From NCBI GenBank assembly GCA_051294905.1, contig CM119373.1:34162001-34226000 (forward strand): a stretch of DNA of 64,000 nucleotides. The letters run 5' to 3'. Under the pieces are notes generated by a model. It was not told where the DNA came from. It did no database searches and saw only the letters and a program-made list of their open reading frames with translations. A program made the translations under genes and the position numbers. Of the stretch, positions 5,151-29,480 are shown piece by piece. Numbering within the stretch: the stretch's first letter is position 1; each line of letters starts with the position of its first letter. Source of the DNA: Botryllus schlosseri (lineage: Eukaryota).

Positions 5151-6620
5151 GAACTACTTGTCTTGGCCGTCCGAGTCTCGAGTCATATGGCGTGGTCAAG
5201 TCGTGCTCCTTGACTCGAGTACAAGTTGAGTCAATGTAGAAATTGCCACATTTTCCATTACAACCCTGATCGTGTTATCCTTCTTTTCATCAATTCCAAG
5301 AATTGCAATGAAGTGATGGATCTGACAGAAAAACCACTGCTTTGAATTTCATCACGAAGATAGTAGTTTTTCGATTTCTTTGCATCTCTTTTACCATGGG
5401 CATCAAATAACAGTCAGTCGCGGCAACAGAAAACAATTTCGAAAACTTCACCCGTCTGTGGCATGATTACTCATCCCGCGATAACCAAAAAGCTGCATTT
5501 TGTCATTGAAAACCTCATCGTAATCTACATTTTCAAAAAAGTTATCTCAGTAATTTTCATACCTTTTCAATCCACGCTACTACTTCAAGTACTTTTGTCA
5601 TGTGAATATCGCTACTATGCATGTAACTAAGTATCATCAATCATGCGCGAGACATTCTTAATCGTAGAGATATAGCAAACAACAAGGCACCATTGAATAC
5701 GCTGGCCTTGCAGATATAACCAAATTTTTTAAATAATAGTCGCCGTAACGAAACACCCCATCATACGCATTTTAAGGAGAGGAAAATTGCTGTTTATATT
5801 TCGATGCCAATCATAATATCCACTGTGTGGTCTTCAAATGATGCGAGATTGAAGTTTTATACCGTAAAATCTTGCTCGAGTCATGAATTGAAGAAAGCCC
5901 GTCTGACACAGATAGAGTCTCGGAGATTGCGATGGTTATCGCCGTATTGTAGTTGCCATCAAAACCCTATTTCAAGCCACGATATTATCTTGCAGCAATG
6001 GGAGTGCGTCAAGAAATTATAATATTGCATGACATTAGCATTGACGTGGAAAAGATGCGATATCAAGACCCGAATCTATAAGTCGTAAAACGAGATAGAA
6101 ACGCAGGCGTTTATAACCGCCTTTGCAGGTCACGTATTCGCTATTAAATTACGCAGTCTTCCCGCACAGAATATTATCCGACCGCAAATTATCAACGGGA
6201 AATCGGAAAATTTGGGCAACTCGCCCGTTACAACGGTTTTGAGATGGGTCCCTCGGCTCCTAATGACTTATTATTACAGACAGCTATTTACGGTACAATA
6301 CAATTGCAGAATATGTGGAATTAGGGAGCTTTTCGTAGAGCCGATAACTTGATTGGCATTTCTTTGGTTGTTGGCCAACGATCCTCGTGTAATCTGGAAG
6401 GACAGCAATCGAAATCAGGACTCTGACCAACATTTGACGTTCACGTTTCAGGTTAACAAAGGTAGAGACCCTTCCGATGTGGCCCGTACAATTTCCTCCA
6501 CGTGTCCATATAACCTCCTTATTTTTGCGAGCAACTCGTGTCCAAAACCAGAAGTTGCGTTTGCTTCGTTGGTTTCAATTTTTTTATGATACGTATTGGG
6601 TGTAAATATTGAACACATTT

Positions 6621-6884
6621 GTTGTTGTTTGTAGGATTCATAGTGTTGGTCGACTACTATGGTCATTGACACCAGGCCAGTTATCTTCATTTTTTATTCC
6701 GTAGCTGCCGACTTGTAGCACGGCCAACTTCTAGGCTTTTATAAGACACCGCTAACACGGATGAGATTCCGAGAACGAGCCCAGATAAACCTCCAACAGA
6801 ATTCCGGAGTCAACCACGGTTGGACTCGAACCCGCAACCCATTAGTGTTGTAGCTGGGGATTATACGCTACGCCATTTCGCCAC
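6621..6884 (-). mobile_element. SINE family A
   Basis: Reverse-complement homology to 4666-4946; TSD ATTGAACACATTT/ATTCAACACATTT (12/13). Confidence 0.85.
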
Positions 6885-7757
6885 ATTCAACACATTTCAA
6901 GACTAGTATTTTAAATCGTTTCCTTGGAATGTAACTGTGACCTTACATAGCAACACCGAACGGGAGAAATGAATTATGATATCATTCGGAAACAACAGAA
7001 TAATCTGTGACAATGAGATATGGTTTGAGGCGAGGTATGTACGGGAATTTTCTCAGCACAAACATAAATAATCTTATAATTACGCATGCTTTGGTTCACA
7101 ACTATAGTATCGGATGTGGTGAAACCAATCACATCTCACAACATGTCGGCGAGCCAGTCGTATTGTATCTCGACTCAACTGGCACACGTCATCATTTTAG
7201 GTCTGACCAATAGTTTATGATTTCGAAATTGGGATAGGATGTCGCGTTATCTCGACAAGCTCGCGTGTAATAACGTCGAATTACATCGTATCAGATTCTG
7301 CGAAAGAAATGAAATCGATTTTATCGACACGAGTATTACTGGGTTCAGATATTGCCGGAATAATGTGCATCTCGCCGCGAATGAAATTTTAATCCATCGT
7401 ACACCCAAATACATTATTTTTTAGGTATGCGGCGGCTGAACAAGCGCGTTCAGGCCGAAGTGGTCAAGGTAGTCACATATAGTACTAAAGAAGTCGCACC
7501 AACAACAAACTTCCGCTGCATTATAAGTAGAAATATCCAAGATACGCCTGAACTCCTTTAAATGGAAGCAGAAAATAGAGGTCTACCAAATACTCAAGTG
7601 AGGAGTTTCAAACAGTAGATTTGTTCGAGGCATCATAAGCGTTTAGCAGTTAATCGGAGATGGCCACCTTGGAAATCAAAAAATCGATCTTCGCGACTAA
7701 CGCCAAATGAACAATGTACCGCAAATACGTGCAATTTTCTAAAATAGGTTCAGTTAG

Positions 7758-8076
7758 CAGGAGAGGGCAACATACGGCCCGCGGGCCGGACCCGCAGCCA
7801 GAGTTCAAAGAGCTTGTTGAGAACTTGATCGACCACAGATGTCTCATTGACTTCAAGAGCTATTGAAGTAGACCTATACAAAAAGTTAATAAATTCATTA
7901 AATACTGTTTTTGGTGTCTGTGCTTTAAACTTAAAGTTTACATTAAATACGTTTTATACTTTGTATAGGTGGATAATTATACGCGATTTATGTATCGATT
8001 CAGGAATCCGACACGCCAAGTAGGCTACTTAGTTTTCCCTTATCAGGCCCGCCGACTGTAGAAGTTGCTCGCCCCT
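7758..8076. mobile_element. Charlie/MER20-like hAT MITE
   Basis: Ends CAGGAGAGGGCAACATACGGCCCGCGGG / GTTGCTCGCCCCT; same family as 20878-21470 in opposite orientation. Confidence 0.6.
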
Positions 8077-8904
8077 CAGTCATAGGGATACAGGGGCTAT
8101 TTTGCTCAGTTGTTATGTCAACACCATTCGCAGAAGAGGTTCAAACATATCCCGAAACTATTCTTGACTCTACGAAATCCTAAAGTGTATAAAATGTTTG
8201 CTCAAGATACTGCTAAGTAGAAGTGGCAGTTGTCCAATAGCAGTTGTGTAAGTAGTTGAGGTAGGCAATATCTAATTGAGTTCTGCGAAAAAGTAGAAGT
8301 ACTTCGATACTGGTCACCTTTGACATCGCCCCTATTCTCATACACATCATGCACCACCCCACCCCGAAGGACAATTTTAATACATTTCCAACAGTTTGAT
8401 TCGTTTTGCAACCGTTTCTGTGAGTAATACAAGGAAATCAGTGAATGATTCTCACATTAGTAACTAAGGTGTTATATATGAAGTTTAGCAGACACGAAAT
8501 ACGTTCAGCTGCTCGATAATTTCTTATCGTCACGACCATAACAAACAAGTCGTCACTCCGACAGCGAAAGTTTAAATATAAGTCATGACAAGCTCCAATT
8601 ATTTGCGATTGCTTTGGCGATTACGCGGAAGCTTGTAATATTTCCGCGTGGAAGATAAGATTATCTTTGTAAATATTTACCGGTTGGAATTAGTAGTGCG
8701 TTCGTGTGAATGGCGAGATCATCGCGACCGGGAAATGAGAATGACCTCTTTGGCATAATCGTCAGTGTTGCAACAATGCGAGCTGTTTTCGCCACTGCAA
8801 TACAACTGAGAGAGGTACGATTGATGGTTGAGATAAGGAAGGCTCCAATAGGTGAGAGCCTTGTGATGTATGTGTAAAAATCTCTTCCACGAGACTGCCT
8901 ATAG

Positions 8905-10113
8905 CAGTGGTCGGGAACCTTTTTGGTCCAAAGAGCCATATTGGCCCTATTTTTTCCATTTTAACTCCCAAAGAGCCAGACATGCCAATCAACTGTTACG
9001 TCACAATTGGAAATCCGTGCCGTCATTGTAGCACTAATTCGAACTCACTATACATGGGATTCGTCGTGGGCGCCAAATTTTCTCTGTAAAACCTCGTACT
9101 AATCATGCTGGTTGCCTTATTTCAGCATGCGAAACTTGAGTTACGATAAAGTAGGTTCGTCCTGATGATCCTTTTAAATGCGAGAACTCATGATCACATA
9201 TGTAGGTGGAGCCAAACATGGTGACTGCAAAAGTGTATAGGCCTACTCACTGCGTAAGCTCTGATACATCAGGGACGTGGGGTTAGGGGAGACAAATGAG
9301 GCAGTGCCTCCCTGTTGTCAGGGTGAGTGAACGAATGACTTAGAATGACTAGATTTTGAATATTTTTCTCCCAAATTCACATAATTTGCATATTTATCGT
9401 TCGAAAATAAAGCGCGAAACTACAGGTAAGGCACAGACGGGCCAAGCCTCACCATCGATAACGCGATTAATGGTAAATAGTTTAATATTTATTAGAACTG
9501 ATATTAATCGAATGTAGCTGTCTCACAGATTCCGAAAATCTATTAGTGATCGATTTCTCAATTCTCAAAGTATTCGGCGGTAACATAACGTTGCGCTGCA
9601 CGCCTACATTTTATTGCAGGTACCACAGGGCTACTTATCAATCAAGCTATGGTGTTCTTTGTAATTGTGAATGTCACGTCCACGGCAATTCAATTCGCAC
9701 CGCAGATCAGGAGGACAATCTGTCATTGGAAAATGTGTTGTCATATGGACCCCGTCGCCATGTGCGCTATTTTCTTTGCTCAATCAACATATCGCACAAT
9801 CCATGGTTTCGAGTAGGGTGCATCGAATTCGCGAGTTGCCGAGTGGTATTAGTCGCCGGCGCGACAGGAACTTGAATTTGAGGATTTTGAAAAGAGGGAT
9901 TCCGAGCACTTAAACCGGAAGACGGCATTGTCTTTACCTCTCAAAGACATGTTTATACTGCCACGAGAATAATTATTCTGGCAGTGATGGAAATTTAGTA
10001 ACAAATTGGTGCGATATTGATCAATTCAGTACAAAAAAATATTTGGCAAAGAGCCATATCTTACACCCAAAAGAGCCATATATGGCTCGCGAGCCATAGG
10101 TTCCCGACCACTG
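8905..10113. mobile_element. Charlie-like hAT non-autonomous element
   Basis: Perfect 15-bp TIR CAGTGGTCGGGAACC; perfect 8-bp TSD GCCTATAG. Confidence 0.9.
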
Positions 10114-10304
10114 GCCTATAGGCTAATGATCGACGATGGTGTCATGTGACTCTTTGGTTCAATGCCGCATCGCGAACGGTGGATATACGGTGTTAGGTTG
10201 GGGACAACCGAATTCACTGGTAACCCAACATCCATATTCCAAAATACGTGGTTGGCAACATAAATATATCTTTATGATAATATTGCAGATGTCAAAGTAA
10301 AATG

Positions 10305-10845
10305 CAGGGTGGTAACCAAGTCGCAAGGCCCCTAGTCACAAGTCAATCTCACTTTTATAGTTTTGACCAGAGCCAAGTCGAGTCATTTTCAATCCACCAC
10401 CGAGTCAAGTCCGAGTCCAAGTCAGCTAGCAGAGGGTCGATTCCGAGTCATGGTATCATGACGCGATTCCCAGTCCAAGTCATTGTGTTGACTGCTCAGT
10501 TTCCGGTTAAAGTCTTGTTAAACCCACTTTTTATAACTCTGTTTGGTGATATCGAATGGTTCGATTTTTCCACACTTTTAGCAGTTTATGGTCGAATTTT
10601 CGAGTAGGCTACAGGTACCATTAGACGAATCCCAATAGTGTGGTTACTTGGTTACTTTACTTTTCTTCGAGATTACAATGAAATGTCTGTCTTGGCCGTC
10701 TGCGTCTCAAGTCATGCGCAATGACTCGAGTCCAAGTCGAGTCAATTCACAGATTGACTCGAGTCATGTCGAGTCATTTCCGTGTTTTGAGAAAATGACT
10801 CGAGTCAATTCAAGTCATCAGAAAATCGTGACTCGACCCGAATGT
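10305..10845. mobile_element. GACTCGAGTC-rich hAT-type MITE, one end disrupted
   Basis: Starts CAGGGTGGTAACC; internal homology to 4261-5150 in reverse orientation. Confidence 0.7.
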
Positions 10846-12590
10846 ACAAGATCCCCTGGCCGTCCTTAGGTAAATCTTTCTTTGCCTACTCGCGATCTTA
10901 CAGATTTTATAAAGGAGACGTTTTAGGATCTTTGCGATCTTGATCAGTTGTAATTGTATAGAAAACTAGATAAATTTCAGCTTTTCCAAATTTGATTAGA
11001 AGAAGAATTACTGAATTCACAAAAACTTGGAAATTAAATTGAGCTCCGAATTAGGAAGAAATACCAAAATAATCAAGTTCAATTCATACCAAATCATTCA
11101 CATGAGCATACGAATGGCAAATGTCTGTACTTTGTACACCAAGTCTGCATCGTATCGCACTATACAGCTCTCATGTAGCATTTCAGGATAGCTGAGTTAA
11201 TATTATACTACAGAAACATTTCACAAATAAGATTAGAATTAAATTATCGACATGTCGCTTTAATTAAGCAACTATAGATGGACATTGCCTCGTGAAACAA
11301 TAGCGATCAAATGGGGACCGATTAGATGGCGATAGACGACTGTGTTTGTTGCATTTCGATGAAGAAACACTTCAATCAACACAGAACGAATATTACAATC
11401 TACGCATGTAGCCACTTGAAAAATAAATTGCCATATCGCACAGTACCGGTCGTTATTGCCCAGAAATCAGACACGCTAAGCTGTCGAAAACGCGCTAACG
11501 GAAGCATCAATGAGGATGAATTGTTAAGCATTGTTCTACACGAGATAAGTCAATGTATCTTTTGAGCTCAAACACACATTCCTTTAGTAATGATGACCTT
11601 TTAATAGACGCGTAGATTTGGCCGGTATTACGGCGCATAAGAACTCGTAAAACATATATTTGTTTCGTCATCATGTTAATCCGGAGAGGCATTTTCATAC
11701 TCTGATGACTTATCGGATCATAACATCACGTTTTTCGTCGGTTTTTCCGAGAAAACCTGGAAACATAATAATCTCTCTCGAGAAGAGACGGGATAAGAGG
11801 TTAACCGACTATGATTCGACATCAACCAGCCATTTAACGACCGTAATAGCAACCTTCACGCCTATTTCGCTAGCTTGATTTTCTATTCCAAATATGTGAT
11901 TCTCACGTGTGTCAGACGATAAGTAGGTCAGATTTAGTATGCTGCAGAAATTATTGGAGAGACGAATATGGAAAATGTAATTTACAACCAAATTTAAAAA
12001 CAATTAGCTGTGAAGGTATACCGCATATATTTTTATTCGATACAGTCGTGCTCGTAAAGTAACGTGGAATTATAATGAGTAAAGTACTTTCCGCAAGAAA
12101 TAAAATCGTCAAAATAATTAGCATCCACATCTATAATATACCTGGTGCAAAGTACTATATGAGAGGGAAGATAACAATCGAATACTGAAAATCATAACAG
12201 TCATCATGTGTCGCCACAAATATAAATGTTATCGGAAGAATCAATATCATAAATAACGCACCTTCCGGTACCAAACCACGTTCCATTCGTTTTATTCACA
12301 TTCTTGTCGCAATATCAAACAAAGGCTTGAATTAATATCTTATTCATTTGCGAAATATTTGTAGCTAATAGCTAATAAAGCAATAGGAAGGTTTACGGAG
12401 AAGTCGAATACACTTTTGTGAGGTTTCTTTAGCACATCGGAAATGTTAAGATTTCTGATTATTAGGCAGCAGGAATTATATATGACTTTGGGTAATTCCA
12501 AATAAATGCTATTCTTTATTACTTCGGTGTTACATTTTCATTGGGCGCAATAGTTTCATTGGGCGTAATATATTCTCTAAACCAGTGCTC

Positions 12591-12869
12591 TTTTTTTGTT
12601 CGTTTTGTGGTATTCGTGGTATTTGTCGACTACTATGATCACCAGGCCGATACGCGTCATTTCTTTCCGTAACTGCCACCTTCTAGCACGGCCGCCACAC
12701 TTCTAGGCTGTTTGTAAGACACCGGCTTACGTGGACGAGGTGGCGAGGAGGAGCCTAGATAAACCTCCGACATTTCGGCATAGGAATTCTGAAGTCGACC
12801 TCGCTCGGACTCGAACCCGCACCTTTTGGTGTCGCAACGGCGGATTATACCACTGCGCTATCTCGCCAC
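12591..12869 (-). mobile_element. SINE family A
   Basis: Full head (reverse A/B boxes at 12805-12869), body and tail homologous to 4666-4946. Confidence 0.85.
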
Positions 12870-12877
12870 TGCTAAAT

Positions 12878-13612
12878 CAGGGCTGTAATGGCTCGAGTAA
12901 TGAATTCACTCAAGTCGGACTTGAGTCGCAATTTTCCGTTGAATCGACTTGAATTGAGTCATATTCTAAAGAATGGTAAATGGCTCGACTCGACTTGAGT
13001 AGATTTATGTATTGACTCGACTTGTGCTCGAGTTATTGCGCATGTCACGACCATGCCATATGACTCGAGATATTCTATATGACTTATTCAAGTTTCGTGT
13101 ATCAGAACCTGCCATGGAAAATTACTCCAGAAACTGAGTTTTATCTGATCGAATAAGCACGTTAAGAGTAGGAAAAACGGGTACAGCTTGATTGCTAAGC
13201 TTTCGATACCACCGAAGAGTTTCACATAAGGGAATTGAACCGGACTTGATCTCAATAATGAATAGTCAACACCATATGACTTGGACTCGGACTCGACCCG
13301 TTGCTCACCCTGACTTGAAATCGGACTTGACTCGGTGGTGAATTGAAAACGTCTCGACTTGTCTCGAGTCCAAACTATATGAAAGTTAAATAGACTTGTG
13401 GCCAATGTTCCCTCTAAGCTGCGCAGGTGCGCAAATGCGCAGTGCTGACACTCTGCGCACAAAAAAAATCAGAAGTTATGGACTTATTTTTAGCCGTTAC
13501 GCACTGTTGTCCACGGGCCTGCGCAGTGATTTGGTGAGTGTGCGCAGACTCTTCAAAAATTAGACGGAGCATTGCTTGTGACTAAGAACCTTGTAACTTG
13601 GTTACAACCCTT
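12878..13612. mobile_element. GACTCGAGTC-rich hAT-type MITE
   Basis: CAGGGCTGTAATG..TTACAACCCT ends; interrupted by 13403-13574. Confidence 0.75.
13403..13574. mobile_element. TGCGCA-rich hAT-type MITE
   Basis: Imperfect TIR CAATGTTCCTCTAA/TTAGACGGAGCATTG; TSD CTTGTGGC/CTTGTGAC; a related degenerate copy lies at about 55147-55343. Confidence 0.8.
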
Positions 13613-16600
13613 CTCAAAACAACATTTTACCACCGTGCCACTGTGTAAAACAGCAGTTACATTTCAGACGAGATGCTGTTGTTTGGTTGGTGCTTAAGTA
13701 ATGTTAAAAACCATACCACATTGATACAATTATAAGCTAAAATATAGACGTCTATGCTATATGCATGAGTACGAACTGGAACGCAAGACAACATTCTTTC
13801 AAATCAGCATGGTGCATTGATACGAGATCTGCCATCGCCTCAAAATCCGAAGCACGGAGCTGCACGGATTTATGGGCTGTCGCATTAATTCATAATCTCA
13901 AACACCTAAATCTGTTGCTGAGTGAGATTTTGCGGACAGCGCCCCACTTGGCAAGGAATTTAAAAGCGGAAAATTCGGTCCTCAGCACATCTGTCGAATT
14001 TCGGAGATTTGAAACATTCCGGGAAATTGCGGGATCAATGGGATATACATGAACCGAAAATCCAAGACCGTCACGAAAATTCGTGACCGGTTACCAACCA
14101 AATGAGACGAAAATAAAGCTTGTCATGTTCAATCGTGGCAAAACTATTACTTACTGTATTTATATAACAGACTTAACCCAACTCTTATTACATCATAACA
14201 AGAAACGCAAACGACGCTGTAGAGCGCACACACCTTAATCGTCGAGTATAAAGCGATTAACAGGCTATCTGCTGTTTGAAGAATCCAGACATACAAATGT
14301 ATTGTTTCGGATCGAATTCCGTCTTTATTTTGAAAACAAGGCATGCGTGTGACATGTGTCGATGGCAAAAGAATACCTGTGGTTTCTCAGTCAACTAAGG
14401 CTATAGGCTTGGATACCGCACGGATGCACGGATGCACACTGCACAGTTGCACACATATGCATACATATTCCCGTGAATTGAATAGTATACATACGAATTG
14501 TTATGGCTGGTGGAGTATACTCATCTCATTCAGATTCAAACTGATGTGATGAGTTATGATCATAATTCACATCGGTACGCGAAATGATCATTGATGACTC
14601 TACAGTATAAATCTATACACAGTGCGAACTGCATACTATTTTTTCACTTAGAATCACTGAGTAAACCGCTACAATGCATCAATGTAGAAGTTAACAAATA
14701 GTTTGAAGCAGTGTTTTCAAGGTTGAGAGGTCATTCAAATTACAGTGTTAATATGATTCCAATCTCTGAAAGATGAAGCCCCACATACCCATCATTATAC
14801 CGATAGGAATCACACTCAAAGATATTCAATCGTATAAAATGTATGCATGCCTTGTCCCACAACCGTGAAGCGTCATGCAATACAGCAACTAAAGAATAGC
14901 AAGAGCCGTCATCAGTTCGACATGTTAACACGAGACCACGTTTACGGAAGATGAGAAGAACACAACGGAATCTAGTACGAGTTGAAAGGTTATTTGTCAA
15001 GGTATGGAATGTAAATCCAATACTGTTGTTATGAAATCAGGAGATATCATTACCAAGGGATTATAGGAGGTTCTCATTAAATTACTGTTGTGTAACGAGT
15101 GATTTAACGGTGTGCGGCGATGCTACCATAATAGTTATATGTTTTTTTTTTTATATCAGAGTCAGTCTAATGACTGCATTTTTTGACAATGCAAAGGAGT
15201 TCATGAATATCTACTTTTTCTATTCCTATTGTATGGTGCCCACTAGCCTGATAAACAAACACCCGTGCTGGCTCACGCTAGCCTATAGTCACACAATATA
15301 CAGCGCATATGACATTGCGGTGTGATCGATGGAATACTAATGGTTGCTATGTGTTAGATTTCATTGAGGCAAGATCTTACTTTGCGTCACATGTAATCTA
15401 AATTACAGAAAGATAGGCTATGCTTATCCGGTTATCATAGCGGGAATGTATCATATATACAAGAATCCGTATTCATGGGATATAGCGTAGGAATTCCGCG
15501 GATAGGACTTGCGCGGATAAAATATACTCCATGCAGTGTTATCGTCACGAGATACGGATGATACCTAGCAGATTACTATATACAGAAACTCAGCTGTTTA
15601 ATAGTGTTTTGTGGGCCACACCGCACGTGCAGACATCGACTCTCGTAAATCGAAACGTATTGTATCTGAAATTACGATAGGAATTTTCCGGCGGTTACAC
15701 TCTGCAAGTATAGATTGGCGGGATATGACGCCCATTGCTACCGAGTGTAGTTGCTATTCAAATTGTAAATCGGTCTGGTTGATATCTATGCTTATAGCTG
15801 TAACGATATACAGTATTCATTAGTGAAACAAGGTGTTTTGTTGGTGGTATTACTTCGTAAAATATCAATGTAGGTAACACTAGTCGCTACAGTCACTGAC
15901 ATATCGCCGCAAATTCCCCACCATCACGCCAAGCGATTTCAACAGCATTCGGAGCATTTATTCAGTTAATTAACTCTGTACACAATCGCCAAACATTTCT
16001 CGCGGCAAAGTCATCAAATGCGAACATACCCGGACACATTTGAAGACAATATTCATCCATGCCTTATAGCGGGGGTTCTCAGACTGGGATATGCGAGCAA
16101 CTTCATTTTTCTGGCACTGCGACAATTTTTTCCAACAGAAATTCAAATTTTTATGTGACAAGTGAGAAAAAAATGTAAGCTGACCAAATCCATCATTTAA
16201 GGTTTCCCACCATGCTTTTACATTGCTGTGCAACGTTACTGGCCTCAACTGCATTTACCCGTAGTGAATTTCTGTTTCTCTACTGCCGCGGTGATGATAG
16301 TCTTTAGGTATAGGGAAATGCAGCTCTAGGATTAGTTCTATCACAACCAATGTCATTCGCTTATTATGAAATCTGATTAACGCGATTGCCTGTGTACAAT
16401 GACAAGCAGGCGATAGAATCTTACGCTGTATAATGATCAAAATCATTTCATAATTCCACGCAGTAGAATATTACTTGGCGATTTCTTCAACTCGAAAATA
16501 CTCTTCGTGCTTCGCGCGATTTCGTTTCGAATGAATTGTTGCTTACAATCTGGCTACCATACCCACCGACAAAATAATAGTAGGCTAATAATAAAAAATA

Positions 16601-21849: not shown

Positions 21850-23769
21850 AACAAGACTGTCTGGCAAAACGAGACTATGCAGCTCAGAAATAGCCAGATA
21901 GTTTGTTGCGTGACAATGTTCAACACGATCACAATGCAAAAATCGTGGTGGATTTTGGGGGTTCCAGTTCCATGAGCAGAATATAATTTATATTTTAATA
22001 ATCAGTATACTGCGGCAGCTTCTCATTGATACCCGTTTTATTAAATTTAGCGCTCGACAAGCCGGTCAAAAATGGTCGTAAAATTGCCTTTGGAAAAATG
22101 GAAAGTAGGACGTAAACCAAATGCAGTCAGCCGTTCAATCTCGCTGTGCCCACACCATTTAGAACACCATGCTTTCACCCCTAATGGGTGGGCTGGACCC
22201 AGATTACGAAACCTGCCTTTCACAAACGCTCTTCTCGCTTGTAACGCGTCCCTGTTAACACAACACCATGAACGAAATACACTATTTGGCAGGCCGTGTT
22301 ATTTTTGGCATATGCCAAAAATTGCTTATTTTTGGCATTTTCAAATTTTTATTTTTGGCATCTGGCTTCTGAAATGCCAAAAATAACACGGCCTGCTTTT
22401 AGGGGTGCCGCCTTCAGGTTTAGGGGCGGTCCTCCTATTTTCAATATCTTCAGATTTCAGTCACTGTCGCGCCGGCGACGAATATCACTCGCGAATTCGA
22501 TGTACCTGGCTCGAAATCATGGATTGCACGATACGTTGACAGATAAAAAAGAATAGCAAACATGATGACGCGCATATAACAACACATTTTTCAAATACAC
22601 AATATATCTTACTGATCCACGGCGGGAAATTAACTACCGTGGACTCTCACAATTACAAACTCGAATTACAAACAATGTCATAGCTATCCACGTTCTTTAT
22701 TGGTAAGTAGCTCTGTAGTGTCGGCGATAAAATGTAGGAGTGTAGCGCAACGTTATGTGTTACCGCTGAATTGAGAATTCGATCAGTGTTTGTATTTTTG
22801 GAATCAGTGCGACAATTAGATTCGATTATTATCAGTTATAATAAATTATAGGCTATTTATGATGAATTTCATTATCAATGGTGAGGCTTGATCCGTATAT
22901 GCCGTACCTTTCGTTTCGCGCTTTATTTCCGAACAAGAAATATGCAAATTGTGTGATTTTGAGAGAAAAATGTTCAAGGACCTGTTATTCATGAACATCG
23001 ATAGATAATACCAATAATAATTGAAGGTGCCACAATTTTCGTTCATTCATCCTGACGACAGTGAGTTACCGGCTTACTTGCCTCCCCTGGCACGACGTCA
23101 CTGATGTATCACACCTTAGAGTGGGTAGGCATGTATACTGCCGTAGTGACAATGTTTGGCTCCCCCTACGCATGTGATCATGGGTTATCGCATTTAAATG
23201 GAGCATGACGACGGACCTACGTTCACGTATCTCTAGTTTCGCATGCTTAAATAAGGCAACCAACATGATTAGTACGAGTTTATTTTTAAAGAAAAAATGT
23301 GGCACGCACAACGTATCCCATATAGTGAGTTCGAGTTGGTGCTATCACGACGTCATGGATTTCAATTTTGACGTAACAGTTCATTGACATGTATGGTAAA
23401 ATGGAAAAAATAGGGCCGATATGGCTCTTCGGACAAAAAAAGGTTTCCGACCGCAGGCCTATGAGATATTTTTCGGATTTGAATAGTGAGAGACTAATAT
23501 ACGTCTGGAAAGGCAAAAAATATGACTAGTAAAGCGAAGCAAACGGTATTTGTCAAAGCACAAGTGCAATCTTCGTCTTCTTGTTGCTTATTGTGTTAGA
23601 GAAATATATGACTAATTCGAAACCATATTGTCTCCGACTATACATCGCACCATCTTGGAATACATTTGCGTTGCATTTCGTCTCTTGCGGCAACTGCGAA
23701 TATCACTGTCCATCAGCACAGATCCAAGACTCGTAATATTTTATCTTGCAATATGCATTTATTTTTCGA

Positions 23770-24130
23770 GGTTCCACACTATCACCGAGAATGCTATTAC
23801 CGAGATGGACATTACCGAGAACGGACATTACCGAGAATGGACATTACCGAGAATGGCCAATGTCAAAGAATCTAGCTTAATGTTAACGGACGTTGTCGAG
23901 AAATTTACACCTGAGAATCGATACCGAATGTGGCAACGCCGTGATGCACACACACGACCTGTGCATATGCATAACATGCCTGCATTGCATATATTGCATT
24001 CTCGGTAATGTCCATTTTCGGTGGTGTCCATTCTCGGTAATGCCCATTCTCGATATTGTCCATTCTCGGTAATGTCCATTCTCGGTATTGTCCTTCTCGG
24101 TAATAGCATTCTCGGTATTGACCGGACACC
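23770..24130. mobile_element. MULE-type MITE with long TIRs made of ATTACCGAGAATGGAC repeats
   Basis: Left arm is (CATTACCGAGAATGGA)n and right arm its reverse complement; 9-bp TSD ATTTTTCGA/ATTTTCCGA. Confidence 0.8.
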
Positions 24131-24300
24131 ATTTTCCGAGACCAATACACACTTTTCCTATCAATACACTCATTGCAGAAGACCAACATTGCAAACCCAT
24201 TGCCGTGACAAAGAAGGGACTGGCTTGGTGTGATTCGCTGGCCAGGGCGGTTGCACCACACGCTGGACACCATAGCGGCGTGAGCATTGTTCTCTTATCA

Positions 24301-24506
24301 TATTCATGGTGTTTTACGACTAAAATGGTCGTTTACACCAGGCCTATTTTCTTTATTTTGATTCCGTGTCTACCGACATGTATCACGGCGCACTTCCAGG
24401 CTTTTTAAGACACCTATAATGTGGACCAGATGGCGGGGAAGAGCCTAGATAAACTCCCAACACTTGCGTATGAATTCTGAAGTCGACCACTACGCTCTCT
24501 CGCCAC
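24301..24506 (-). mobile_element. SINE family A with internal deletion of the B-box region
   Basis: Body and extreme 5' end homologous to 4666-4946; the segment between GTCGACC and CACTACGC is missing. Confidence 0.8.
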
Positions 24507-24573
24507 ATTTAGGTATGGTATAAGTCAGAGTATAGTAGATTGATATCTTGTAATAAAATTGCACTATGTAGCC

Positions 24574-25211
24574 CAGTGGTTCTTATACTTTTTAGACCGC
24601 GACCCAAATCTGACTTTTAGTGGTATCTCGCGACCCAAGCAACACACACCAAAATGAATGCATTTGGGTGCCGACCAATTATATCAATAACGAAGGGTTT
24701 GGCCACCCAACGACGGTCAATTATCGCCACCGAACTTTTTGGCACCGCACTTTGCCCAGCCGTATGTTGGCCCAACGCCATATATTCATGTGTCCAAGCG
24801 TGGACGGGTTTTGGCCTCATAAACCGGCAACCGCTCGTTGTACAACTCAACACTAAAGCGTCCCAGGTCTCCGACGGTGTTTTCCAGAGAAACCAATGTT
24901 GAAAAAATCTTATCATGAATTCAAACCAATTTGTTTAATACAAAGGTCGGCACATTTTCATGATCAAGTCATGTTGTGGTGGCGACTTCTCCGCGTGTCT
25001 CGCTTATTGGCCGTGGTACCAAACTCATTGACCTCTGATATGCTCAAACCAACTACAGTAAATCGCGCAAAAAGCGAACATATTTTGTTGTTGCAATGAC
25101 CTCAAATAATATTACATACATATTAAAGGACCGGTCTTGTACCGTCGCGACCCAAAATTATACCCTTCGCGACCTATGTTTGGGTCGCGACCCATACTTT
25201 AAGAACCACTG
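24574..25211. mobile_element. Charlie/MER5-like hAT MITE
   Basis: TIR CAGTGGTTCTTA/TAAGAACCACTG; subterminal CGCGACCC motifs; flanks share TAGCC (partial TSD). Confidence 0.8.
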
Positions 25212-25353
25212 TAGCCAGTGCCAGAAATATAATGGAAACTTGTACTTATACTTCGTAGAAAAGCTTGTCCTTCAATAAAGAATACTCGACTGAATTCGTG
25301 AGATCCAGACGTTTGGGAGGCGGTCAAATGGTGGAATAGCAGCAGCAATCCAA

Positions 25354-26385
25354 CTACACCCCCGCAACCTTTAATTTTCGAACATTACTGGCGACGCGGT
25401 AGCCACATTTCCCGGACTTCTTCGCCTCGTAAAGTGCTTCGTCGGCACGGCGTAGGATTCCGGTATCTGTTGCATCCCGACGAAGCGCAATACCGCAACT
25501 CACCGTAACCGTCTTTTTAATGCCGAAGTCGTGGCTTGCGATAGATTCGTGAATTCGAGTGACGCGATGCTCCAGCGCGTTATATTCGATATCGTAAAAC
25601 ACTATCACGAACTCATCTCCGCCCCAGCGGCCAACGTGACCCACACTTTTGAGGTTTTCCTCTAGTAATTTGGCTACACCAATCAATACGTTATCCCCGA
25701 CAATATGTCCGTATTCGTCGTTAATACGCTTAAAATCATCAATGTCAACAATTGTGATCCATTTTACTCCTCGCTCCTGTAATACTGCTTCCATATATCG
25801 ACGATTGCGCAATTGTGTCAAAACGTCCGTATGACAAAGTACGAACATTTCACGACTGATCTCTTCCAGTTGTGTCATAGCGCGATTTTGGCTAGAGACG
25901 TAGAAATGAACGATCTCGAAAAGGTGGAAATACATAGCCGTCAATAAAATAAACGTGGTTCTATCGAACGACACAGGACGCCAATTTTCGGAGCCATTCA
26001 CACAAACGTATGTGAAAACTCCAAAATGAACTAGTATAAAGACTGGTTCAATTTTGTAGCCCGTAACAAAAATTGAAAAAACAGGCGTTAAAATCGAGAA
26101 TATCGCCGCGAATTCATAACTGTCGTATCTCCAAATGTAAAGCAGACTTATCGCTAACATGATTGCGACAATAATGAAAGCTGGCATGCTTGATTTACGG
26201 CTCTGCAGTGAGTCAAGATAGCTCCAAACACCACAACTCCGCGAGCCAAGCGCTTGAAGAATCACTGTGCTTTCCATTAGTAGAAGAGATAAGTTTTCCT
26301 TCGAGAAATCGGGAATATCATGCGCACCATTGGCAGAAGGATGGGCAACAATGTCTGTATAATCTGGCGGATGACGATGCGCCAA
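25354..26385 (-). CDS. Membrane-anchored GGDEF-domain diguanylate cyclase (bacterial type, intronless); putative horizontally acquired gene
   Basis: Only long ORF in the window (343 aa from TTG; first in-frame ATG at 26277 gives 307 aa). All canonical GGDEF blocks occur in order: TDVLTQLRNRR, IVDIDDFKRINDEYGHIVGDNVL (DIDDFK at 25729-25746), GRWGGDEF (GGDEF at 25609-25623), TVSCGIA, ILRRADEALYEAKKSGK. About 4 hydrophobic segments lie N-terminal of the domain (approx. 25890-26190). Confidence 0.93.
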   Translation of the reverse strand: MAHRHPPDYTDIVAHPSANGAHDIPDFSKENLSLLLMESTVILQALGSRSCGVWSYLDSLQSRKSSMPAFIIVAIMLAISLLYIWRYDSYEFAAIFSILTPVFSIFVTGYKIEPVFILVHFGVFTYVCVNGSENWRPVSFDRTTFILLTAMYFHLFEIVHFYVSSQNRAMTQLEEISREMFVLCHTDVLTQLRNRRYMEAVLQERGVKWITIVDIDDFKRINDEYGHIVGDNVLIGVAKLLEENLKSVGHVGRWGGDEFVIVFYDIEYNALEHRVTRIHESIASHDFGIKKTVTVSCGIALRRDATDTGILRRADEALYEAKKSGKCGYRVASNVRKLKVAGV

Positions 26386-26439
26386 TTACATGAATGCGAC
26401 AGGTATTAACCAGCATCCGTACGGCACGCCATCCATTAA

Positions 26440-26482
26440 CCTAAATGCAGTATTTAATAGCTTAACCTGCAATAATTAGTAT
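26440..26482 (-). promoter_or_regulatory. Candidate branch point and 3' splice (or SL trans-splice) acceptors upstream of the GGDEF gene
   Basis: Minus strand reads TACTAATTATTGCAG|GTTAAGCTATTAAATACTGCATTTAG|GTTAATG: a TACTAAT branch-like motif, two AG|G acceptors, and an ATG (26436) 4 nt after the second. Confidence 0.35.
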
Positions 26483-29221
26483 GGATACCATTGTAAACAT
26501 CATTGTGTTCCAAAGTTAAATTTACTATACAAATCGAAAGATATACTGAAACTCTCATCCACACTGTTGTGTTGTGATCTAAACAAGGCGATATATTAAT
26601 TATTTTTGCTTTGTTGGGCTGATGGACTATGTGATTTGGTGCGTACTCACATATTCCTATATATTAGGTGAATTTTGGGTGGGGTTAAGGTGTGTGAATC
26701 GAAAATTTCGTTGTTGATACGGAAAAGAAGGGTGTTATGGGCCCAAAAATTTGAAGTAACTCAAAATGGCGTAATCGAAACTGAGTCACAGAAAGGATGC
26801 TAAGACAGGATGGATCAAAGTAAATGTTGATTTGAAGATGCAATTACCAGCGTGTGCCGTAATCATTCGCTTTGATGGGATTTTACCTTACGTTTGCAAA
26901 AGTTCAGAAACGCTTTCAAAAACTAACTCTGTGGGCTAACTCTCTACGCGGCGTGTTTATCGATTAGTGAATGAACCAATTTTATTCATATATTTTGACA
27001 CTAATACTAACTGCTTCAACAACAACATTCTGATGTGAAAGTAGGCTACACTTTACAGTTGAGTCTAGAACGCTTACGTAAAAAGAATGGACATTGGACA
27101 CTCTTACCAAAGGGTCATATAGAAGAGAAAAGCAAGAGTGCCCATAATCTCACTTCTGAGCCCCCGTGGCGACATGTTTGTTCAGAATTGATATATTTCG
27201 AATCGTCAATATCGAGCGTAGACCTATTCACATGTTTGACTGACGAAATATCTCACAGTCATGTGATTTGCTCGACAAAAACCAGAGGTGCCGCTAAGGG
27301 GTGTATGTCCTATAGATGTTATGACAAAAGTAATCCGCGCAACGGACTATCAACCCGCAGTTTGACTGATAGCAGGTGTCGGCGGGATAACGGCTCGTCA
27401 ATCTTGTTACTAACAACAGTAGAATTAAATAATCTGACGGACTACATCTGTGAACCGTATCGCGCCAGACTTCGTCAAATGTAGTTGTGGATCCAGCTTG
27501 TAACCGTAATGAACGGGAGAGTCATTAGTGTACCGTGTACCTGCATATCGACAAAATTAACGAAGCTTACTTCTGAATGATGAAGTACTTAAGACAGCTC
27601 GCATTTCTAACATGAGGTCATCTGAATGCAATGTGCCCTTACAACTTTATCCATGATTTGTTGTAACAATTAGGATTAAGATTGCAACAAAGCGAAGTGA
27701 TGTAGGGGGTTGCGAGAACGCAACATTCGTTCGCACGATACCTTTGGGCTTTGACTAACTGCTGCTTGGAAATGACCCTCTTCACACTTGGAATGTTAAT
27801 TCACGACCAGGCGAAAAAGGCAATCACATTACGATCGGCCTGTCCCGTATACTGCCCAAATAGTCCGTTTGCAGGACTTCGATCACAGCAGCGGTCTCAG
27901 ATTACTTCCACCGTTAAATTTTGATAGGCACACAGAGCCCAAAAATGAGGATTTTAAATCGGAACTCTACCATAAGCACAGACGCAGAAAGCATCGGCAT
28001 GCTAACCAATCGAACGTTGCCATATGCGGTACAAATCACGTGACCGAAGTCATGTAAAGACCCTATTTGCACCAAATTATAATGGCAGTTCAACTGCATA
28101 CCTTGGGATGATGTTTAAACTGGTGACTCGACTTGGCCCTTCCTTAATAGTAGGCAGACAGGACAAGTTTGCCCTGTGCGCACACCGCAATTATACCTCT
28201 CTATCCAGTCCATTGGGTTTGACACGGAGACGCATTGACGCATTTTGAAGTCAATAACTACCGCATTGCGTTGTGTGGCGCGATTACTACAACCACTGCA
28301 GATTGTAAAACTGGCTGTTTCAAAAGTAGGTCAACTTGCAGTAATTTTTATATCTTTCTGATCTACAACCATCACTTGAAGACACACAGAACTATGCCCT
28401 TATCTGAGCGTAAAACGAAGCAGTCCAATGTTGACGATGCTCAGCAATGAGTTGGTCGCATGAAGGTAATAACTGTTTTGAATGCTGTCAAGACGAGCGA
28501 CAGGAAGAGCGTATCGATATTTCACACATTCCTATTTCAATGCCCGGACAATTATTGCATCCGCACTAATAAATCGAAGTTTGCAGCATAACAAGGGTAT
28601 GACTAACATTACCGTTTTTGCAATATTTGTGCAAGTGAATTGCGGATAATAAAGGCCGCGCAGATTTCGCGTGATATGTGGGTCACCATTGGGATTGCAT
28701 CAATTGCATGGTGTAACCCGGTGGGAGTCAATATAGACAATGTCAAATGGAAAATCCTGCATCTGAATACTGCTTGTGAGTCTATATATAATCGCTATAG
28801 CAATCAACTCAGCAGTAACTGTTTTAGTAATGTGAACGGTCATCGGTCAACGTATATTGCATACGGAAATAATGTAATTCCATATCCTCAAAAAGCGCGG
28901 CGCAAAGCAAATCAGCGGTACATTTCTTTATAAATTTCAGGTGTCTCCCCCGTTCGAAATTGCGCACAAATCAGCCGAATATACACCTGTGAGTCGGCGG
29001 GGCATAAATCAAATGCTTCAGCCACTGGTGTAAAATGACCATTGATGTCGAAACACCATAAACACCGAAACATCACCAATAACTTATATACATCGCGAGC
29101 GGCTCACGAGCTTCTGTCCACGTGTATTACCTTCTGGGATGTTAATTCACTCGCTATCCATAGGCTAAAAGTGTATGTGGGACTCCTTGTGAAAGTGAAC
29201 GATTGAAAACAACTAGAGTAA

Positions 29222-29480
29222 GTTTGAAGAGACTATTGGAGATACAAAACTTCAGTATACAATTGACTCATATATTCATGTTGAAATAAACCCGAATGTT
29301 TTCGACTGACACACGTCATACTTCAAAGCAGTCATATTGCTGTTATACAATGTTCTTTTCAATTCTCTACTAGTTGCTGATGAGTACTCATGGTTAGTGT
29401 AAGCCGATAATATTCGGGTTTATTTCGATATGAATAATGAATATATTATGAATTGTACACGGCAAGTCTGTTGAATTGAA
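29222..29480. repeat. Fold-back (palindromic) repeat family; other copies near 2860-3100, 36550-36620, 38200-38320, 40640-40800, 52415-52530, 53430-53525, 59120-59372
   Basis: Arms TTGAAATAAACCCGAAT..TTCG / CGA..ATTCGGGTTTATTTC; shared motifs CTCTACTAGTTG and TTCAATTGTATATTGAAGTTCTGTACC recur at the listed sites. Confidence 0.7.

What the first reader, a model, noticed from the sequence alone, without database searches (positions are those of the whole stretch)
25354..26385. A bacterial-type diguanylate cyclase sitting alone in animal-type DNA: candidate horizontally acquired c-di-GMP signalling in a metazoan
Seen: an intact intronless GGDEF ORF, the only long ORF in 64 kb, with no operon or bacterial gene on either side. 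The window is otherwise full of SINEs and MITEs and holds a GT-AG spliced lectin gene. Established: GGDEF enzymes make c-di-GMP, a bacterial second messenger. The clearly demonstrated eukaryotic case is dictyostelid DgcA, and animal GGDEF hits have often been suspected contaminants. Bacterial cellulose synthase BcsA is switched on by c-di-GMP through its PilZ domain. Tunicates make cellulose with a horizontally acquired CesA. STING binds c-di-GMP. Inference: if the host is an ascidian, this enzyme could supply c-di-GMP for (i) tunic cellulose control, (ii) endogenous STING/cyclic-dinucleotide signalling, or (iii) manipulation of surface biofilms. None of these is shown by the sequence.
Basis: partly seen in the sequence, partly recalled or inferred. 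Interest (0 to 1): 0.95.

Follow-up and report, generated by a model that had tools for sequence, protein, structure and literature searches.

The report
Vibrio cyclase gene in sea-squirt DNA
A sea squirt chromosome really does carry a piece of a Vibrio gene for the enzyme that makes the bacterial signal c-di-GMP, with its catalytic part still complete, but the evidence so far suggests the animal is not using it.

Summary
25354-26385 (-) is a 343-codon ORF, the only ORF of 150 aa or more in 64 kb, with a strong GGDEF match (5e-33), every catalytic residue and a confident cyclase fold. It is not contamination. In independent samples it has single-copy host depth, short-read contigs join it to host flanks and repeats, and it carries host-type haplotype variation. 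It nests inside Vibrio, sister to V. aestuarianus (53% identity), and no closer donor was found. It is not a whole gene: homology starts at ORF residue 39, the first ~50 codons (TM1) are missing, and Pfam no longer detects MASE6.

Evidence for use by the host is weak. Haplotypes differ by 7 amino-acid changes to 1 silent change. Diversity equals that of the flanks. A 2-bp indel rewrites the tail. Five or six bacterial-invariant positions are changed. Two bulk RNA-seq samples gave no reads, and other RNA runs gave only traces.

Against pure decay, the catalytic domain has diverged no more than between Vibrio orthologues, while the membrane part is strongly accelerated. One run of unknown type looks RNA-like and covers the locus, strand unknown.

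Verdict: a real bacterium-to-chordate transfer and most likely an unused relic. I put current function at about 0.2. An earlier scan note on this same stretch reported the missing RxxD site.

The parts
25354..26385 (-). Open reading frame of 343 codons plus stop (TAG at 25354-25356); the start is a mechanical TTG
25390..26271 (-). Segment homologous to the bacterial MASE6-GGDEF family (ORF residues 39-332, profile positions 51-344 of 346); this is the detectable bacterial-derived DNA
   Evidence: hmmsearch 320 bits, E 3e-99, one frame only; no trace of the N-terminal 50 positions
25897..26271 (-). Remnant membrane domain (equivalents of TM2-TM6). Hydropathy is within the bacterial range, but the sequence is strongly diverged and Pfam does not call MASE6
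25408..25833 (-). GGDEF catalytic domain (residues 185-326)
   Evidence: Pfam; alignment to PleD; model pLDDT 93-98; fold matches DgcB, PleD and others
25609..25623 (-). Active-site motif G-G-D-E-F (residues 255-259). The I-site position reads KSVG rather than RxxD
26275..26277 (-). First in-frame ATG (Met37), two codons before homology begins. It is the only plausible eukaryotic start and would give a 307-aa protein
26386..26388 (-). In-frame TAA that closes the frame upstream; the sequence beyond it shows no homology to the bacterial N-terminus
25385..25386 (-). Polymorphic +TA insertion in the X5/X6 haplotype. It shifts the frame after Ser333, so the tail reads IMFEN-stop instead of NVRKLKVAGV-stop
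   Evidence: table 4; frame worked out
24574..25211 (.). Host TIR element of about 640 bp, 144 bp downstream of the stop. It is present in the window haplotype and absent in others, and proves that the ORF lies next to mobile host DNA
   Evidence: (X5 contig joins 24566 to 25210)
26355..26358 (.). Point where the X6 contig leaves the window sequence. It reads AG on the ORF strand and GT on the + strand, so it is a possible splice junction of unknown strand
   Evidence: table 8 (record 28); sequence

Best explanation
A fragment of a Vibrio-type membrane diguanylate cyclase gene (MASE6-GGDEF) entered the germ line of a sea squirt and is now a single-copy, fixed or common part of a chromosome, in repeat-rich DNA where I found no host gene nearby. 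The fragment lacks its first ~50 codons. No transposon vehicle is visible, so integration was probably by illegitimate end joining (inferred). The frame is still open and the catalytic centre is complete. If it were translated from Met37, it would give a five-helix membrane-anchored cyclase able to join two GTP into c-di-GMP, without product feedback because it has no RxxD site; this is inferred from homology and the model. The animal does not appear to maintain or use it as a protein-coding gene at present. It is best read as a horizontally transferred gene relic that is silent or transcribed only at trace, possibly non-coding, level and is drifting.
For: Integration: the ORF's depth equals the flank depth in X1 (14.5 against about 17), X5 (67.8 against 69.2) and X6 (18 against 21.6). 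An X5 contig links 24128-24566 to 25210-26317 and another spans 26320-26578. At least ten runs from five or more studies hold ORF words.
Origin: the best hit is V. aestuarianus at 53% identity. The other close hits are Vibrio and Marinomonas genes, and the three contexts I fetched (P0001-P0003) are bacterial neighbourhoods. The tree puts the sequence sister to V. aestuarianus with 99/97 support.
Truncation: homology runs from residue 39 only. Hydropathy at the TM1 position is -0.04 against 2.15 +/- 0.34 in bacteria. MASE6 is undetectable even at E 10.
Drift: there are 7 non-synonymous and 1 synonymous differences between haplotypes, pN/pS is about 2, and omega of 0.2 or less is rejected at p 0.01-0.02. 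ORF diversity is 0.93% against 0.98% in the flanks. Derived alleles sit at conserved sites: A211T, where 15 of 18 bacteria have A, and R312C, where 13 of 18 have R. There is a frameshift polymorphism in the tail. Five or six columns that are invariant in the 18 bacteria are changed (6 of 38; 5 of 36 by the stricter gap-free count), against 0-1 in every bacterial member.
Expression: X23 and X29 gave no reads on 25400-27600, and X15 and X16 gave only three fragments at depth 2.6-2.9. Eleven upstream ATGs precede Met37 within 520 nt.
Against: The frame is open over 305 homologous codons on a long branch (0.87 against 0.088 for the sister). Uniform neutral decay sufficient for even a conservative excess leaves no stop in only 2.7% of simulations, before counting indels.
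The GGDEF domain is as conserved as between Vibrio orthologues (61% identity, 2 of 32 invariant sites changed, one of them the harmless E to D). The membrane part is accelerated (46% against 68-75%; identity ratio 0.67-0.84 against 0.93-1.28 in all Vibrio pairs). That pattern fits selection on the catalytic domain during part of this lineage's history.
The tri- and tetranucleotide signature is host-like, which could mean long residence in the host.
Run X6, of unknown type, has RNA-like patchy coverage and holds the whole ORF on one contig at depth 18. Within two studies some runs hold the ORF and others do not.
The SNP sample is small (8 sites). A model with a relaxed membrane part and a constrained GGDEF domain still gives 7 or more of 8 non-synonymous with p about 0.2.
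Confidence: 0.62

Rival explanations
1. It is a domesticated, working enzyme. The sea squirt expresses the ORF from Met37 or from an upstream spliced exon, in particular tissues or conditions, as a membrane-anchored cyclase. The bacterial sensor domain has lost its old role and drifted, while the catalytic domain is kept by selection. The c-di-GMP it makes acts inside the animal (for example on STING) or on surface bacteria.
For: All catalytic residues are present and the fold is confident. The frame is open on a long branch, and uniform neutral decay is disfavoured (p about 0.03). The domains differ, with GGDEF conserved and MASE6 accelerated. Oligonucleotide composition is host-like. TM2-TM6 remain hydrophobic. 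The RNA-run fragments fall only within 25210-26448 and not in the unique flanks. Run X6 looks RNA-like, holds the ORF at depth 18, and its contig leaves the genome sequence at an AG on the ORF strand. Presence of the ORF varies between samples within studies P3 and P4.
Against: The haplotype differences are 7 non-synonymous to 1 synonymous, with derived changes at conserved catalytic-domain sites. Diversity equals that of the flanks. There were no reads in about 1.9 and 1.5 billion sampled bases of two bulk RNA-seq runs. There is no intron, no verified promoter, poly(A) site or leader, and many upstream ATGs. Arg codons remain bacterial, 19 CGN to 2 AGR. The X6 junction fits a GT donor on the opposite strand equally well. 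Neither tunicate HGT survey lists the gene.
Confidence: 0.2
2. It was transferred very recently from an unsampled Vibrio-related bacterium, for example a host-associated lineage. That donor's copy already had a divergent, N-terminally altered membrane domain, so nearly all the divergence is bacterial and the time spent in the host is short. This is a sub-case of the relic reading with a specific timing.
For: No protein above 53% identity was found, either by the word-index search of the 5.8 billion clusters at 90% identity or by the exhaustive scan of 1.84 billion representatives, both drawn from about 15 billion proteins. GGDEF divergence equals ordinary distances between Vibrio species. RSCU correlates with Vibrio genes at r 0.65 and Arg codons are bacterial. 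CpG o/e is 1.55-1.78, far from the host equilibrium of 1.11. The polymorphism looks neutral.
Against: The ORF's GC and CpG also differ from its nearest Vibrio homologues, and its oligonucleotide signature lies 2-4 sd below Vibrio DNA. A working bacterial MASE6 protein without TM1 has no sampled precedent among the 18 relatives. The insertion predates the split of haplotypes that are about 1% apart and is present in every adequately covered run.
Confidence: 0.3
3. It is an assembly chimera or bacterial contamination wrongly joined to animal DNA.
For: The ORF is intronless and has bacterial-type Arg codon usage.
Against: Independent samples and studies give the same junctions on short-read contigs. 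Depth equals that of the single-copy flanks. Haplotype SNPs are shared across individuals, and a host transposon insertion polymorphism lies 144 bp from the stop. No bacterial neighbour genes are present. Identity to any known bacterium is only 53%.
Confidence: 0.02

Closest known systems
Vibrio MASE6-GGDEF diguanylate cyclases (e.g. the V. aestuarianus GGDEF domain-containing protein, P0001; annotated AdrA-like in Marinomonas)
   Same: It is collinear from profile position 51 to 344 and is the phylogenetic sister of the V. aestuarianus protein. It has the same linker plus GGDEF layout, the same absence of an RxxD I-site, and the same K in the SGK motif.
   Different: It lacks the first ~50 residues including TM1. 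The Pfam MASE6 model no longer matches. The membrane part is only 46% identical where sister species share 68-75%. Bacterial-invariant positions are replaced (S144T, R166Q, L180M, N327C; also N177S in the looser count), along with the benign E257D. It sits in animal DNA with no bacterial neighbours.
Bacteria-to-tunicate gene transfers already described: cellulose synthase CesA, GH6-1, and the Styela clava cold-shock protein genes (PMC7540406, PMC10334666, PMC13390645)
   Same: It is a bacterial gene integrated in an ascidian chromosome, with coverage equal to its surroundings and a bacterial phylogenetic position. These are the same criteria used for the Csp genes.
   Different: Those genes are expressed, and two of the three Csp genes have acquired introns (CesA and GH6-1 introns: my recollection, not checked here). 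Some have shown functions or regulated expression. This one has no intron, no clear transcript and neutral-looking polymorphism. It is absent from both papers.
Dictyostelium DgcA, the established eukaryotic GGDEF cyclase (Chen and Schaap 2012; from my own knowledge, not retrieved here)
   Same: It is a eukaryote-encoded GGDEF domain with a complete active site.
   Different: DgcA is expressed, makes c-di-GMP and controls stalk differentiation. None of these is shown here, and the Vibrio origin implies a much later, independent acquisition.
Non-functional nuclear insertions of bacterial DNA, such as Wolbachia-to-insect transfers (general knowledge)
   Same: It is intronless bacterial DNA in an animal chromosome with little or no transcription and neutral evolution.
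   Different: Those insertions are usually near-identical to a known resident symbiont and often large. This one is a single sub-gene fragment only 53% identical to anything sampled, with an open frame and a domain-specific conservation pattern.

Membership tests
GGDEF-domain diguanylate cyclase (PF00990), catalytically competent type | Profile match above the curated threshold | tested here: met
   E 5.3e-33, 114.5 bits against a cutoff of 23.8, covering 2-159 of 161 profile positions
GGDEF-domain diguanylate cyclase (PF00990), catalytically competent type | GG[D/E]EF active-site loop, plus the metal-, guanine- and phosphate-binding residues (my numbering for PleD: D327, N335, D344, R366, K442, R446) | tested here: met
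   DIDDFKRINDEYGHIVGD, GRWGGDEF and EAKKSGK align to PleD. All are invariant in 13- and 28-sequence alignments. At the last position the ORF has K where PleD has R, as do the Vibrio relatives.
GGDEF-domain diguanylate cyclase (PF00990), catalytically competent type | Palm-like GGDEF fold preceded by a dimerising helix | tested here: met
   The AlphaFold model has pLDDT 86.8 overall and 93-98 in the domain. Foldseek matches DgcB (TM 0.85, rmsd 2.0), PleD, WspR and DosC.
GGDEF-domain diguanylate cyclase (PF00990), catalytically competent type | Makes c-di-GMP from GTP | not testable with these tools
   Needs an enzyme assay or a reporter in E. coli.
GGDEF-domain diguanylate cyclase (PF00990), catalytically competent type | RxxD allosteric inhibition site (typical of the family, not defining) | tested here: not met
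   The position reads KSVG where PleD has RAID. The site is also absent in the Vibrio relatives.
MASE6-GGDEF family (PF20966 + PF00990) | Detectable MASE6 membrane domain | tested here: not met
   No MASE6 hit even at E 10, while V. aestuarianus P0001 scores 1e-08.
MASE6-GGDEF family (PF20966 + PF00990) | Full-length collinearity including the N-terminal segment and TM1 | tested here: not met
   The alignment starts at profile position 51. The upstream region scores at random, rank about 11000 of 21786. Hydropathy at TM1 is -0.04 against 2.15.
MASE6-GGDEF family (PF20966 + PF00990) | Descent from the family (phylogenetic nesting) | tested here: met
   Sister to V. aestuarianus inside a Vibrio clade, support 99/97. 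The GGDEF-only tree gives the same placement with weaker support (90/84); the membrane-only tree leaves the Vibrio clade unresolved.
Functional (domesticated) bacterium-to-animal transferred gene | Physical integration in the host chromosome, reproducible in independent individuals | tested here: met
   Bridging contigs, equal depth and shared haplotypes in X1, X5 and X6.
Functional (domesticated) bacterium-to-animal transferred gene | Sense transcription as mature mRNA | tested here: inconclusive
   Two raw RNA-seq samples gave no reads and two RNA runs gave trace fragments. The RNA-like run X6 covers the locus, but its strand and library type are unknown.
Functional (domesticated) bacterium-to-animal transferred gene | Purifying selection in the host | tested here: inconclusive
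   Polymorphism of 7 non-synonymous to 1 synonymous argues against it. The conserved GGDEF domain against the accelerated membrane part argues for past constraint, but this could have acted in the donor.
Functional (domesticated) bacterium-to-animal transferred gene | Acquired eukaryotic gene features (introns, poly(A) signal in place, clean 5' leader) | tested here: not met
   There is no intron in the ORF. Eleven upstream ATGs precede Met37. The nearest AATAAA or ATTAAA is 350-415 nt downstream of the stop.
Functional (domesticated) bacterium-to-animal transferred gene | Conserved orthologue in related host species | not testable with these tools
   No searchable collection of eukaryotic genomes was available. 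'Organism B' (X10) is about 99% identical, so it says nothing about age.

The most novel reading that the evidence does not exclude
A chordate makes the bacterial second messenger c-di-GMP itself. On this reading the sea squirt has domesticated the catalytic half of a Vibrio cyclase as a feedback-insensitive, membrane-anchored enzyme and has let the bacterial sensor domain drift. It would switch the gene on only in certain tissues or conditions (the runs that hold the ORF against those that do not), for example to drive its own STING pathway or to manipulate bacteria on the tunic.
Probability: 0.15. Interest if true: 0.9.

Novelty: new member of a known kind. Interest (0 to 1): 0.5.

Why it matters
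Horizontal gene transfer from bacteria into animals is accepted for a small number of cases, and tunicates supply the best-known one, cellulose synthase. GGDEF hits in animal assemblies have generally been dismissed as contamination.

This case passes the integration tests in independent individuals. So at least one chordate genome truly carries a catalytically complete diguanylate cyclase sequence of identifiable Vibrio ancestry.

If it is a relic, it is a clean, datable example of how bacterial DNA enters and decays in a chordate germ line. It would also warn that an intact ORF with an intact active site is not evidence of function.

If it is used, it would be the first animal-encoded source of c-di-GMP, which bears directly on STING biology and on host-microbe signalling. 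In either case a few simple experiments can settle the question.

Tried and rejected
1. The ancestral start codon lies upstream of the in-frame TAA ('MDGVPYGCWL' resembles the bacterial 'M-------WL'). Rejected: an N-terminal profile scores this region at rank about 11000-16000 of 21786 windows.
2. TM2 has eroded. Withdrawn: its hydropathy of 0.95 is within the bacterial range of 1.32 +/- 0.40.
3. Frameshifted remnants of the N-terminus. None found in any frame.
4. Mapping the insert boundaries with a Vibrio-versus-host Markov model in 150-bp windows. Too noisy to use.
5. Finding a closer donor in bacterial genomes. The protein searches give nothing above 53%.
6. Bacterial remnants in the flanks. 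Ten flanking ORFs have no significant domain. Promoter-like and terminator-like sites are at chance level.
7. A transposon vehicle. No TIRs or direct repeats bracket the ORF. Rfam finds nothing in 20-32 kb.
8. Neutral decay of the membrane part alone. It cannot be rejected: P(no stop) is 0.11 and hydropathy is retained in 26% of simulations.
9. Clean intron boundaries for the X6 coverage gap at 26357-26748. Neither strand has both GT and AG at the block edges, so it stays unresolved.
10. Locating the lectin gene by motif scan. Not found.
11. Prior literature on animal or tunicate GGDEF genes. None in the searchable library.
Full report
OBSERVATION

It is the only ORF of 150 aa or more in the 64-kb window. 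Pfam finds a GGDEF domain at residues 185-326 with E 5.3e-33. The motif G-G-D-E-F is at 25609-25623. The listed start is a mechanical TTG immediately after an in-frame TAA (26386-26388). The first ATG is codon 37 (26275-26277).

Window composition is about 41% GC throughout, and the ORF is 44.7%. The scan's earlier notes call the host a sea squirt. They also mention a bacterial-type cold-shock gene with an intron in the same genome. Such genes were reported for Styela clava (PMC7540406), so that species is a plausible host, but I did not verify this.

IS IT REALLY IN THE ANIMAL GENOME?

Yes. I laid Logan contigs of four runs on 23400-28400.
- In X1 (probably the assembly's own sample), X5 (another sample and study) and X6 (a 2018 study), the ORF has the same depth as the unique flanks: 14.5 against about 17, 67.8 against 69.2, and 18 against 21.6.
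- One X5 contig aligns to 24128-24566 and then directly to 25210-26317. So the ORF is physically joined to host DNA that includes a repeat with six copies in the window (24287-24488).
- Another X5 contig spans 26320-26578, across the 5' end of the ORF.
- The sequence that the X5 contig skips (24567-25209) is a ~640-bp element with 12-nt terminal inverted repeats and a short target duplication. It is present in the window haplotype and absent in X5, X6 and X15, which makes it a host transposon insertion polymorphism 144 bp from the stop codon.
- X5 and X6 share a haplotype that differs from the window at about 1% of positions in both the ORF and the flanks.
- At least ten runs from five or more studies hold ORF words.

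Contamination and chimeric assembly are therefore excluded for practical purposes.

WHERE IT CAME FROM

The closest protein, found by a word-index search of the 5.8 billion clusters (at 90% identity) of a collection of about 15 billion proteins, is a V. aestuarianus MASE6-GGDEF protein (53% identity over 85% of the query). The next hits belong to clusters that include V. mexicanus and Vibrio sp. 99-70-13A1 proteins (49% and 47%). An exhaustive scan of 1.84 billion representatives from the same collection found nothing closer. These relatives sit in ordinary bacterial neighbourhoods.

A maximum-likelihood tree of 37 sequences places the ascidian sequence inside a Vibrio clade, sister to V. aestuarianus with 99/97 support. 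Ten ORFs around the gene have no significant domain. Promoter-like and terminator-like sites are at chance level. No inverted or direct repeats bracket the ORF. So a single sub-gene fragment arrived without a recognisable vehicle.

ANATOMY

A profile built from 12 bacterial relatives aligns from profile position 51 to 344 of 346, which corresponds to ORF residues 39-332, in one frame only. The first ~50 positions of the family, which include TM1, have no counterpart. An N-terminal profile scores the upstream region no better than random DNA from the window. Hydropathy at the TM1 position is -0.04, against 2.15 +/- 0.34 in the bacteria. TM2-TM6 keep normal hydropathy, yet Pfam cannot detect MASE6 even at E 10, while it does in the Vibrio protein.

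The catalytic domain is complete.
- DIDDFKRINDEYGHIVGD, GRWGGDEF and EAKKSGK align residue for residue with PleD.
- They occupy invariant columns in the family alignments.
- The RxxD inhibition site is absent (KSVG), as in the Vibrio relatives.
- An AlphaFold model of residues 37-343 has pLDDT 86.8 overall and 93-98 in the GGDEF part. It matches solved cyclases such as DgcB, PleD, WspR and DosC.

IS THE ANIMAL USING IT? EVIDENCE AGAINST

1. Polymorphism. Between the window and the X5/X6 haplotype there are eight coding differences upstream of the tail. Seven change the amino acid and one is silent. That gives pN/pS of about 2 and rejects omega of 0.2 or less at p 0.01-0.02.
2. Polarity. Polarised against the bacteria, the window haplotype carries the derived states A94, F103, T211 and I310, and X5 carries C312. 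Several of these are at positions conserved in 13-15 of the 18 bacteria, including positions in the catalytic domain.
3. Diversity. Nucleotide diversity is 0.93% in the ORF and 0.98% in the flanks (counts).
4. Frameshift. A +TA insertion after 25385 in X5/X6 replaces the last ten residues with five others.
5. Invariant positions. Six of 38 columns that are invariant in 18 bacterial relatives are changed (S144T, R166Q, N177S, L180M, E257D, N327C), while every bacterial member has 0 or 1 changed. A stricter count that drops columns with gaps gives 5 of 36, without N177S.
6. RNA. Two raw bulk RNA-seq runs, sampled at about 1.9 and 1.5 billion bases, gave no read on 25400-27600. Two contig sets from RNA runs gave three fragments at depth 2.6-2.9.
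7. Gene features. There is no intron. Eleven ATGs lie within 520 nt upstream of Met37. The nearest poly(A) signal is 350-415 nt beyond the stop.
8. Literature. The Styela clava genome paper's HGT screen and a 2026 survey of tunicate HGT do not list the gene.

EVIDENCE THE OTHER WAY

The terminal branch is ten times longer than the sister's (0.87 against 0.088), yet no stop has appeared in 305 homologous codons. In simulations, uniform neutral decay sufficient for even a conservative estimate of the excess leaves the frame open in 2.7% of runs, before counting indels.

The excess is not uniform.
- The GGDEF domain is 61% identical to V. aestuarianus. This is the same as between Vibrio species (57-64%). 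Its branch length is 0.41 and 2 of 32 invariant sites are changed, one of them the harmless GGEEF to GGDEF.
- The membrane and linker part is 46% identical where those species share 68-75%. Its branch length is 1.29 and 3 of 4 invariant sites are changed.
- In every Vibrio pair the membrane part is about as conserved as the catalytic part or more so (ratio 0.93-1.28). For the ascidian copy the ratio is 0.67-0.84.

So at some time the catalytic domain was under selection while the membrane domain was not. Sequence alone cannot say whether that happened in an unsampled donor or in the host.

Composition does not settle the question.
- Arg codons are 19 CGN to 2 AGR, and RSCU correlates with Vibrio genes at r 0.65. 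Both are bacterial-like.
- CpG o/e (1.55-1.78) is above both the host (1.11) and the Vibrio homologues (0.74-1.10).
- The tri- and tetranucleotide signature falls in the host range, 2-4 sd below Vibrio DNA.

Run X6 is labelled as of unknown type, and it does not behave like whole-genome DNA. Its repeat-to-unique depth ratio is about 30, against 1000-11000 in the DNA runs. Its unique coverage is patchy: 25210-26356 at 18x, 26749-27899 at 21.6x, and zero or near zero elsewhere. If it is RNA-seq, the locus is transcribed in that sample.

Within studies P3 and P4, some runs hold 34-66% of the ORF words. Others hold under 5% of the ORF words while still holding the neighbouring repeats. The X6 contig leaves the genome sequence at 26356/26357. 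That point reads AG on the ORF strand and GT on the opposite strand, so the transcript could be sense and spliced, or antisense. I had no read-laying runs left to resolve this.

MOST LIKELY MECHANISM

Shown:
- a Vibrio-family cyclase fragment is integrated, single-copy and polymorphic like host DNA;
- it lacks TM1;
- its catalytic residues and fold are intact;
- present-day variation looks unconstrained;
- transcription is absent or very low in the RNA samples that could be read.

Inferred:
- a double-strand-break repair event inserted a 5'-truncated gene fragment;
- the reading frame extends 38 codons into unrelated sequence by chance, for which I estimate a probability of about 0.1;
- the locus is now a drifting relic, possibly swept into low-level or non-coding transcription.

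If it were translated from Met37, the product would be a five-helix membrane protein. Its stalk helix would pair two GGDEF domains to condense two GTP into c-di-GMP, without product inhibition.

My probabilities are as follows.
- Relic not currently maintained as a gene: about 0.62. This includes the sub-case of very recent arrival from an unsampled donor.
- Currently functional cyclase: about 0.2.
- Artefact: about 0.02.
- Remainder: mixed histories, such as a gene once used and recently released from selection.

COMPARISON AND NOVELTY

By descent the sequence belongs to the Vibrio MASE6-GGDEF family, but it fails two of that family's defining features: a detectable MASE6 domain and full-length collinearity. 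It meets every sequence and fold criterion of a competent GGDEF cyclase, though activity is untested. As a transferred gene it meets the integration and phylogeny criteria used for the tunicate CesA, GH6 and Csp cases, but not the expression, intron or selection criteria.

I found no report of a tunicate or other animal GGDEF acquisition in the searchable literature. It is therefore a new member of a known kind, bacterial DNA transferred into an animal genome, carrying an unusual and potentially consequential cargo. An earlier scan note on this same stretch (s1-270938) had already remarked on the missing RxxD site, and I confirmed that.

Noticed in passing
window 24574-25211: A ~640-bp element with 12-nt terminal inverted repeats (CAGTGGTTCTTA / TAAGAACCACTG) and a 5-7-bp target duplication (TAGCC / TGTAGCC). 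It is present in this haplotype but absent in runs X5, X6 and X15. The family is at roughly 500-1000 times single-copy depth, so it appears to be a recently mobile MITE.
   Followed up: partly
window 23784-24116: A hairpin element whose 76-nt arms (92% complementary) are built from 16-nt tandem units. It has enormous depth in DNA runs (100,000-400,000 against 15-68 for single-copy sequence), making it one of the most abundant repeats of this genome.
   Followed up: no
window 29273-29436: A small inverted-repeat element (40-nt arms) that is strongly represented in all four RNA runs, with many different flanking sequences. It is probably a MITE embedded in many transcripts.
   Followed up: no
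window 24287-24488: A repeat with six copies in the window. Contigs from other copies run on into TCGGTCGGACTCGAACCCGCAACCC, which looks like the 3' half of a tRNA, so it may be a tRNA-derived SINE.
   Followed up: no
window 25853-28076 in run X10: A run labelled as a different organism ('organism B') carries the ORF and its flanks at about 99% identity, with the X5-type alleles. It is either a very close sibling species or a labelling or mixed-sample issue.
   Followed up: no
window 25354-26385: The ORF's CpG content (o/e 1.55, and 1.78 in the catalytic half) exceeds both the host background (1.11) and the three nearest Vibrio genes (0.74-1.10). I have no explanation for this.
   Followed up: partly
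window 26749-27899: A stretch with no long ORF (longest 149 aa) and no Pfam domain, upstream of the GGDEF ORF, is covered in run X6 at the same depth as the ORF (21.6 against 18), while the neighbouring unique DNA has none. It may be part of the same transcript or a separate transcribed unit.
   Followed up: no
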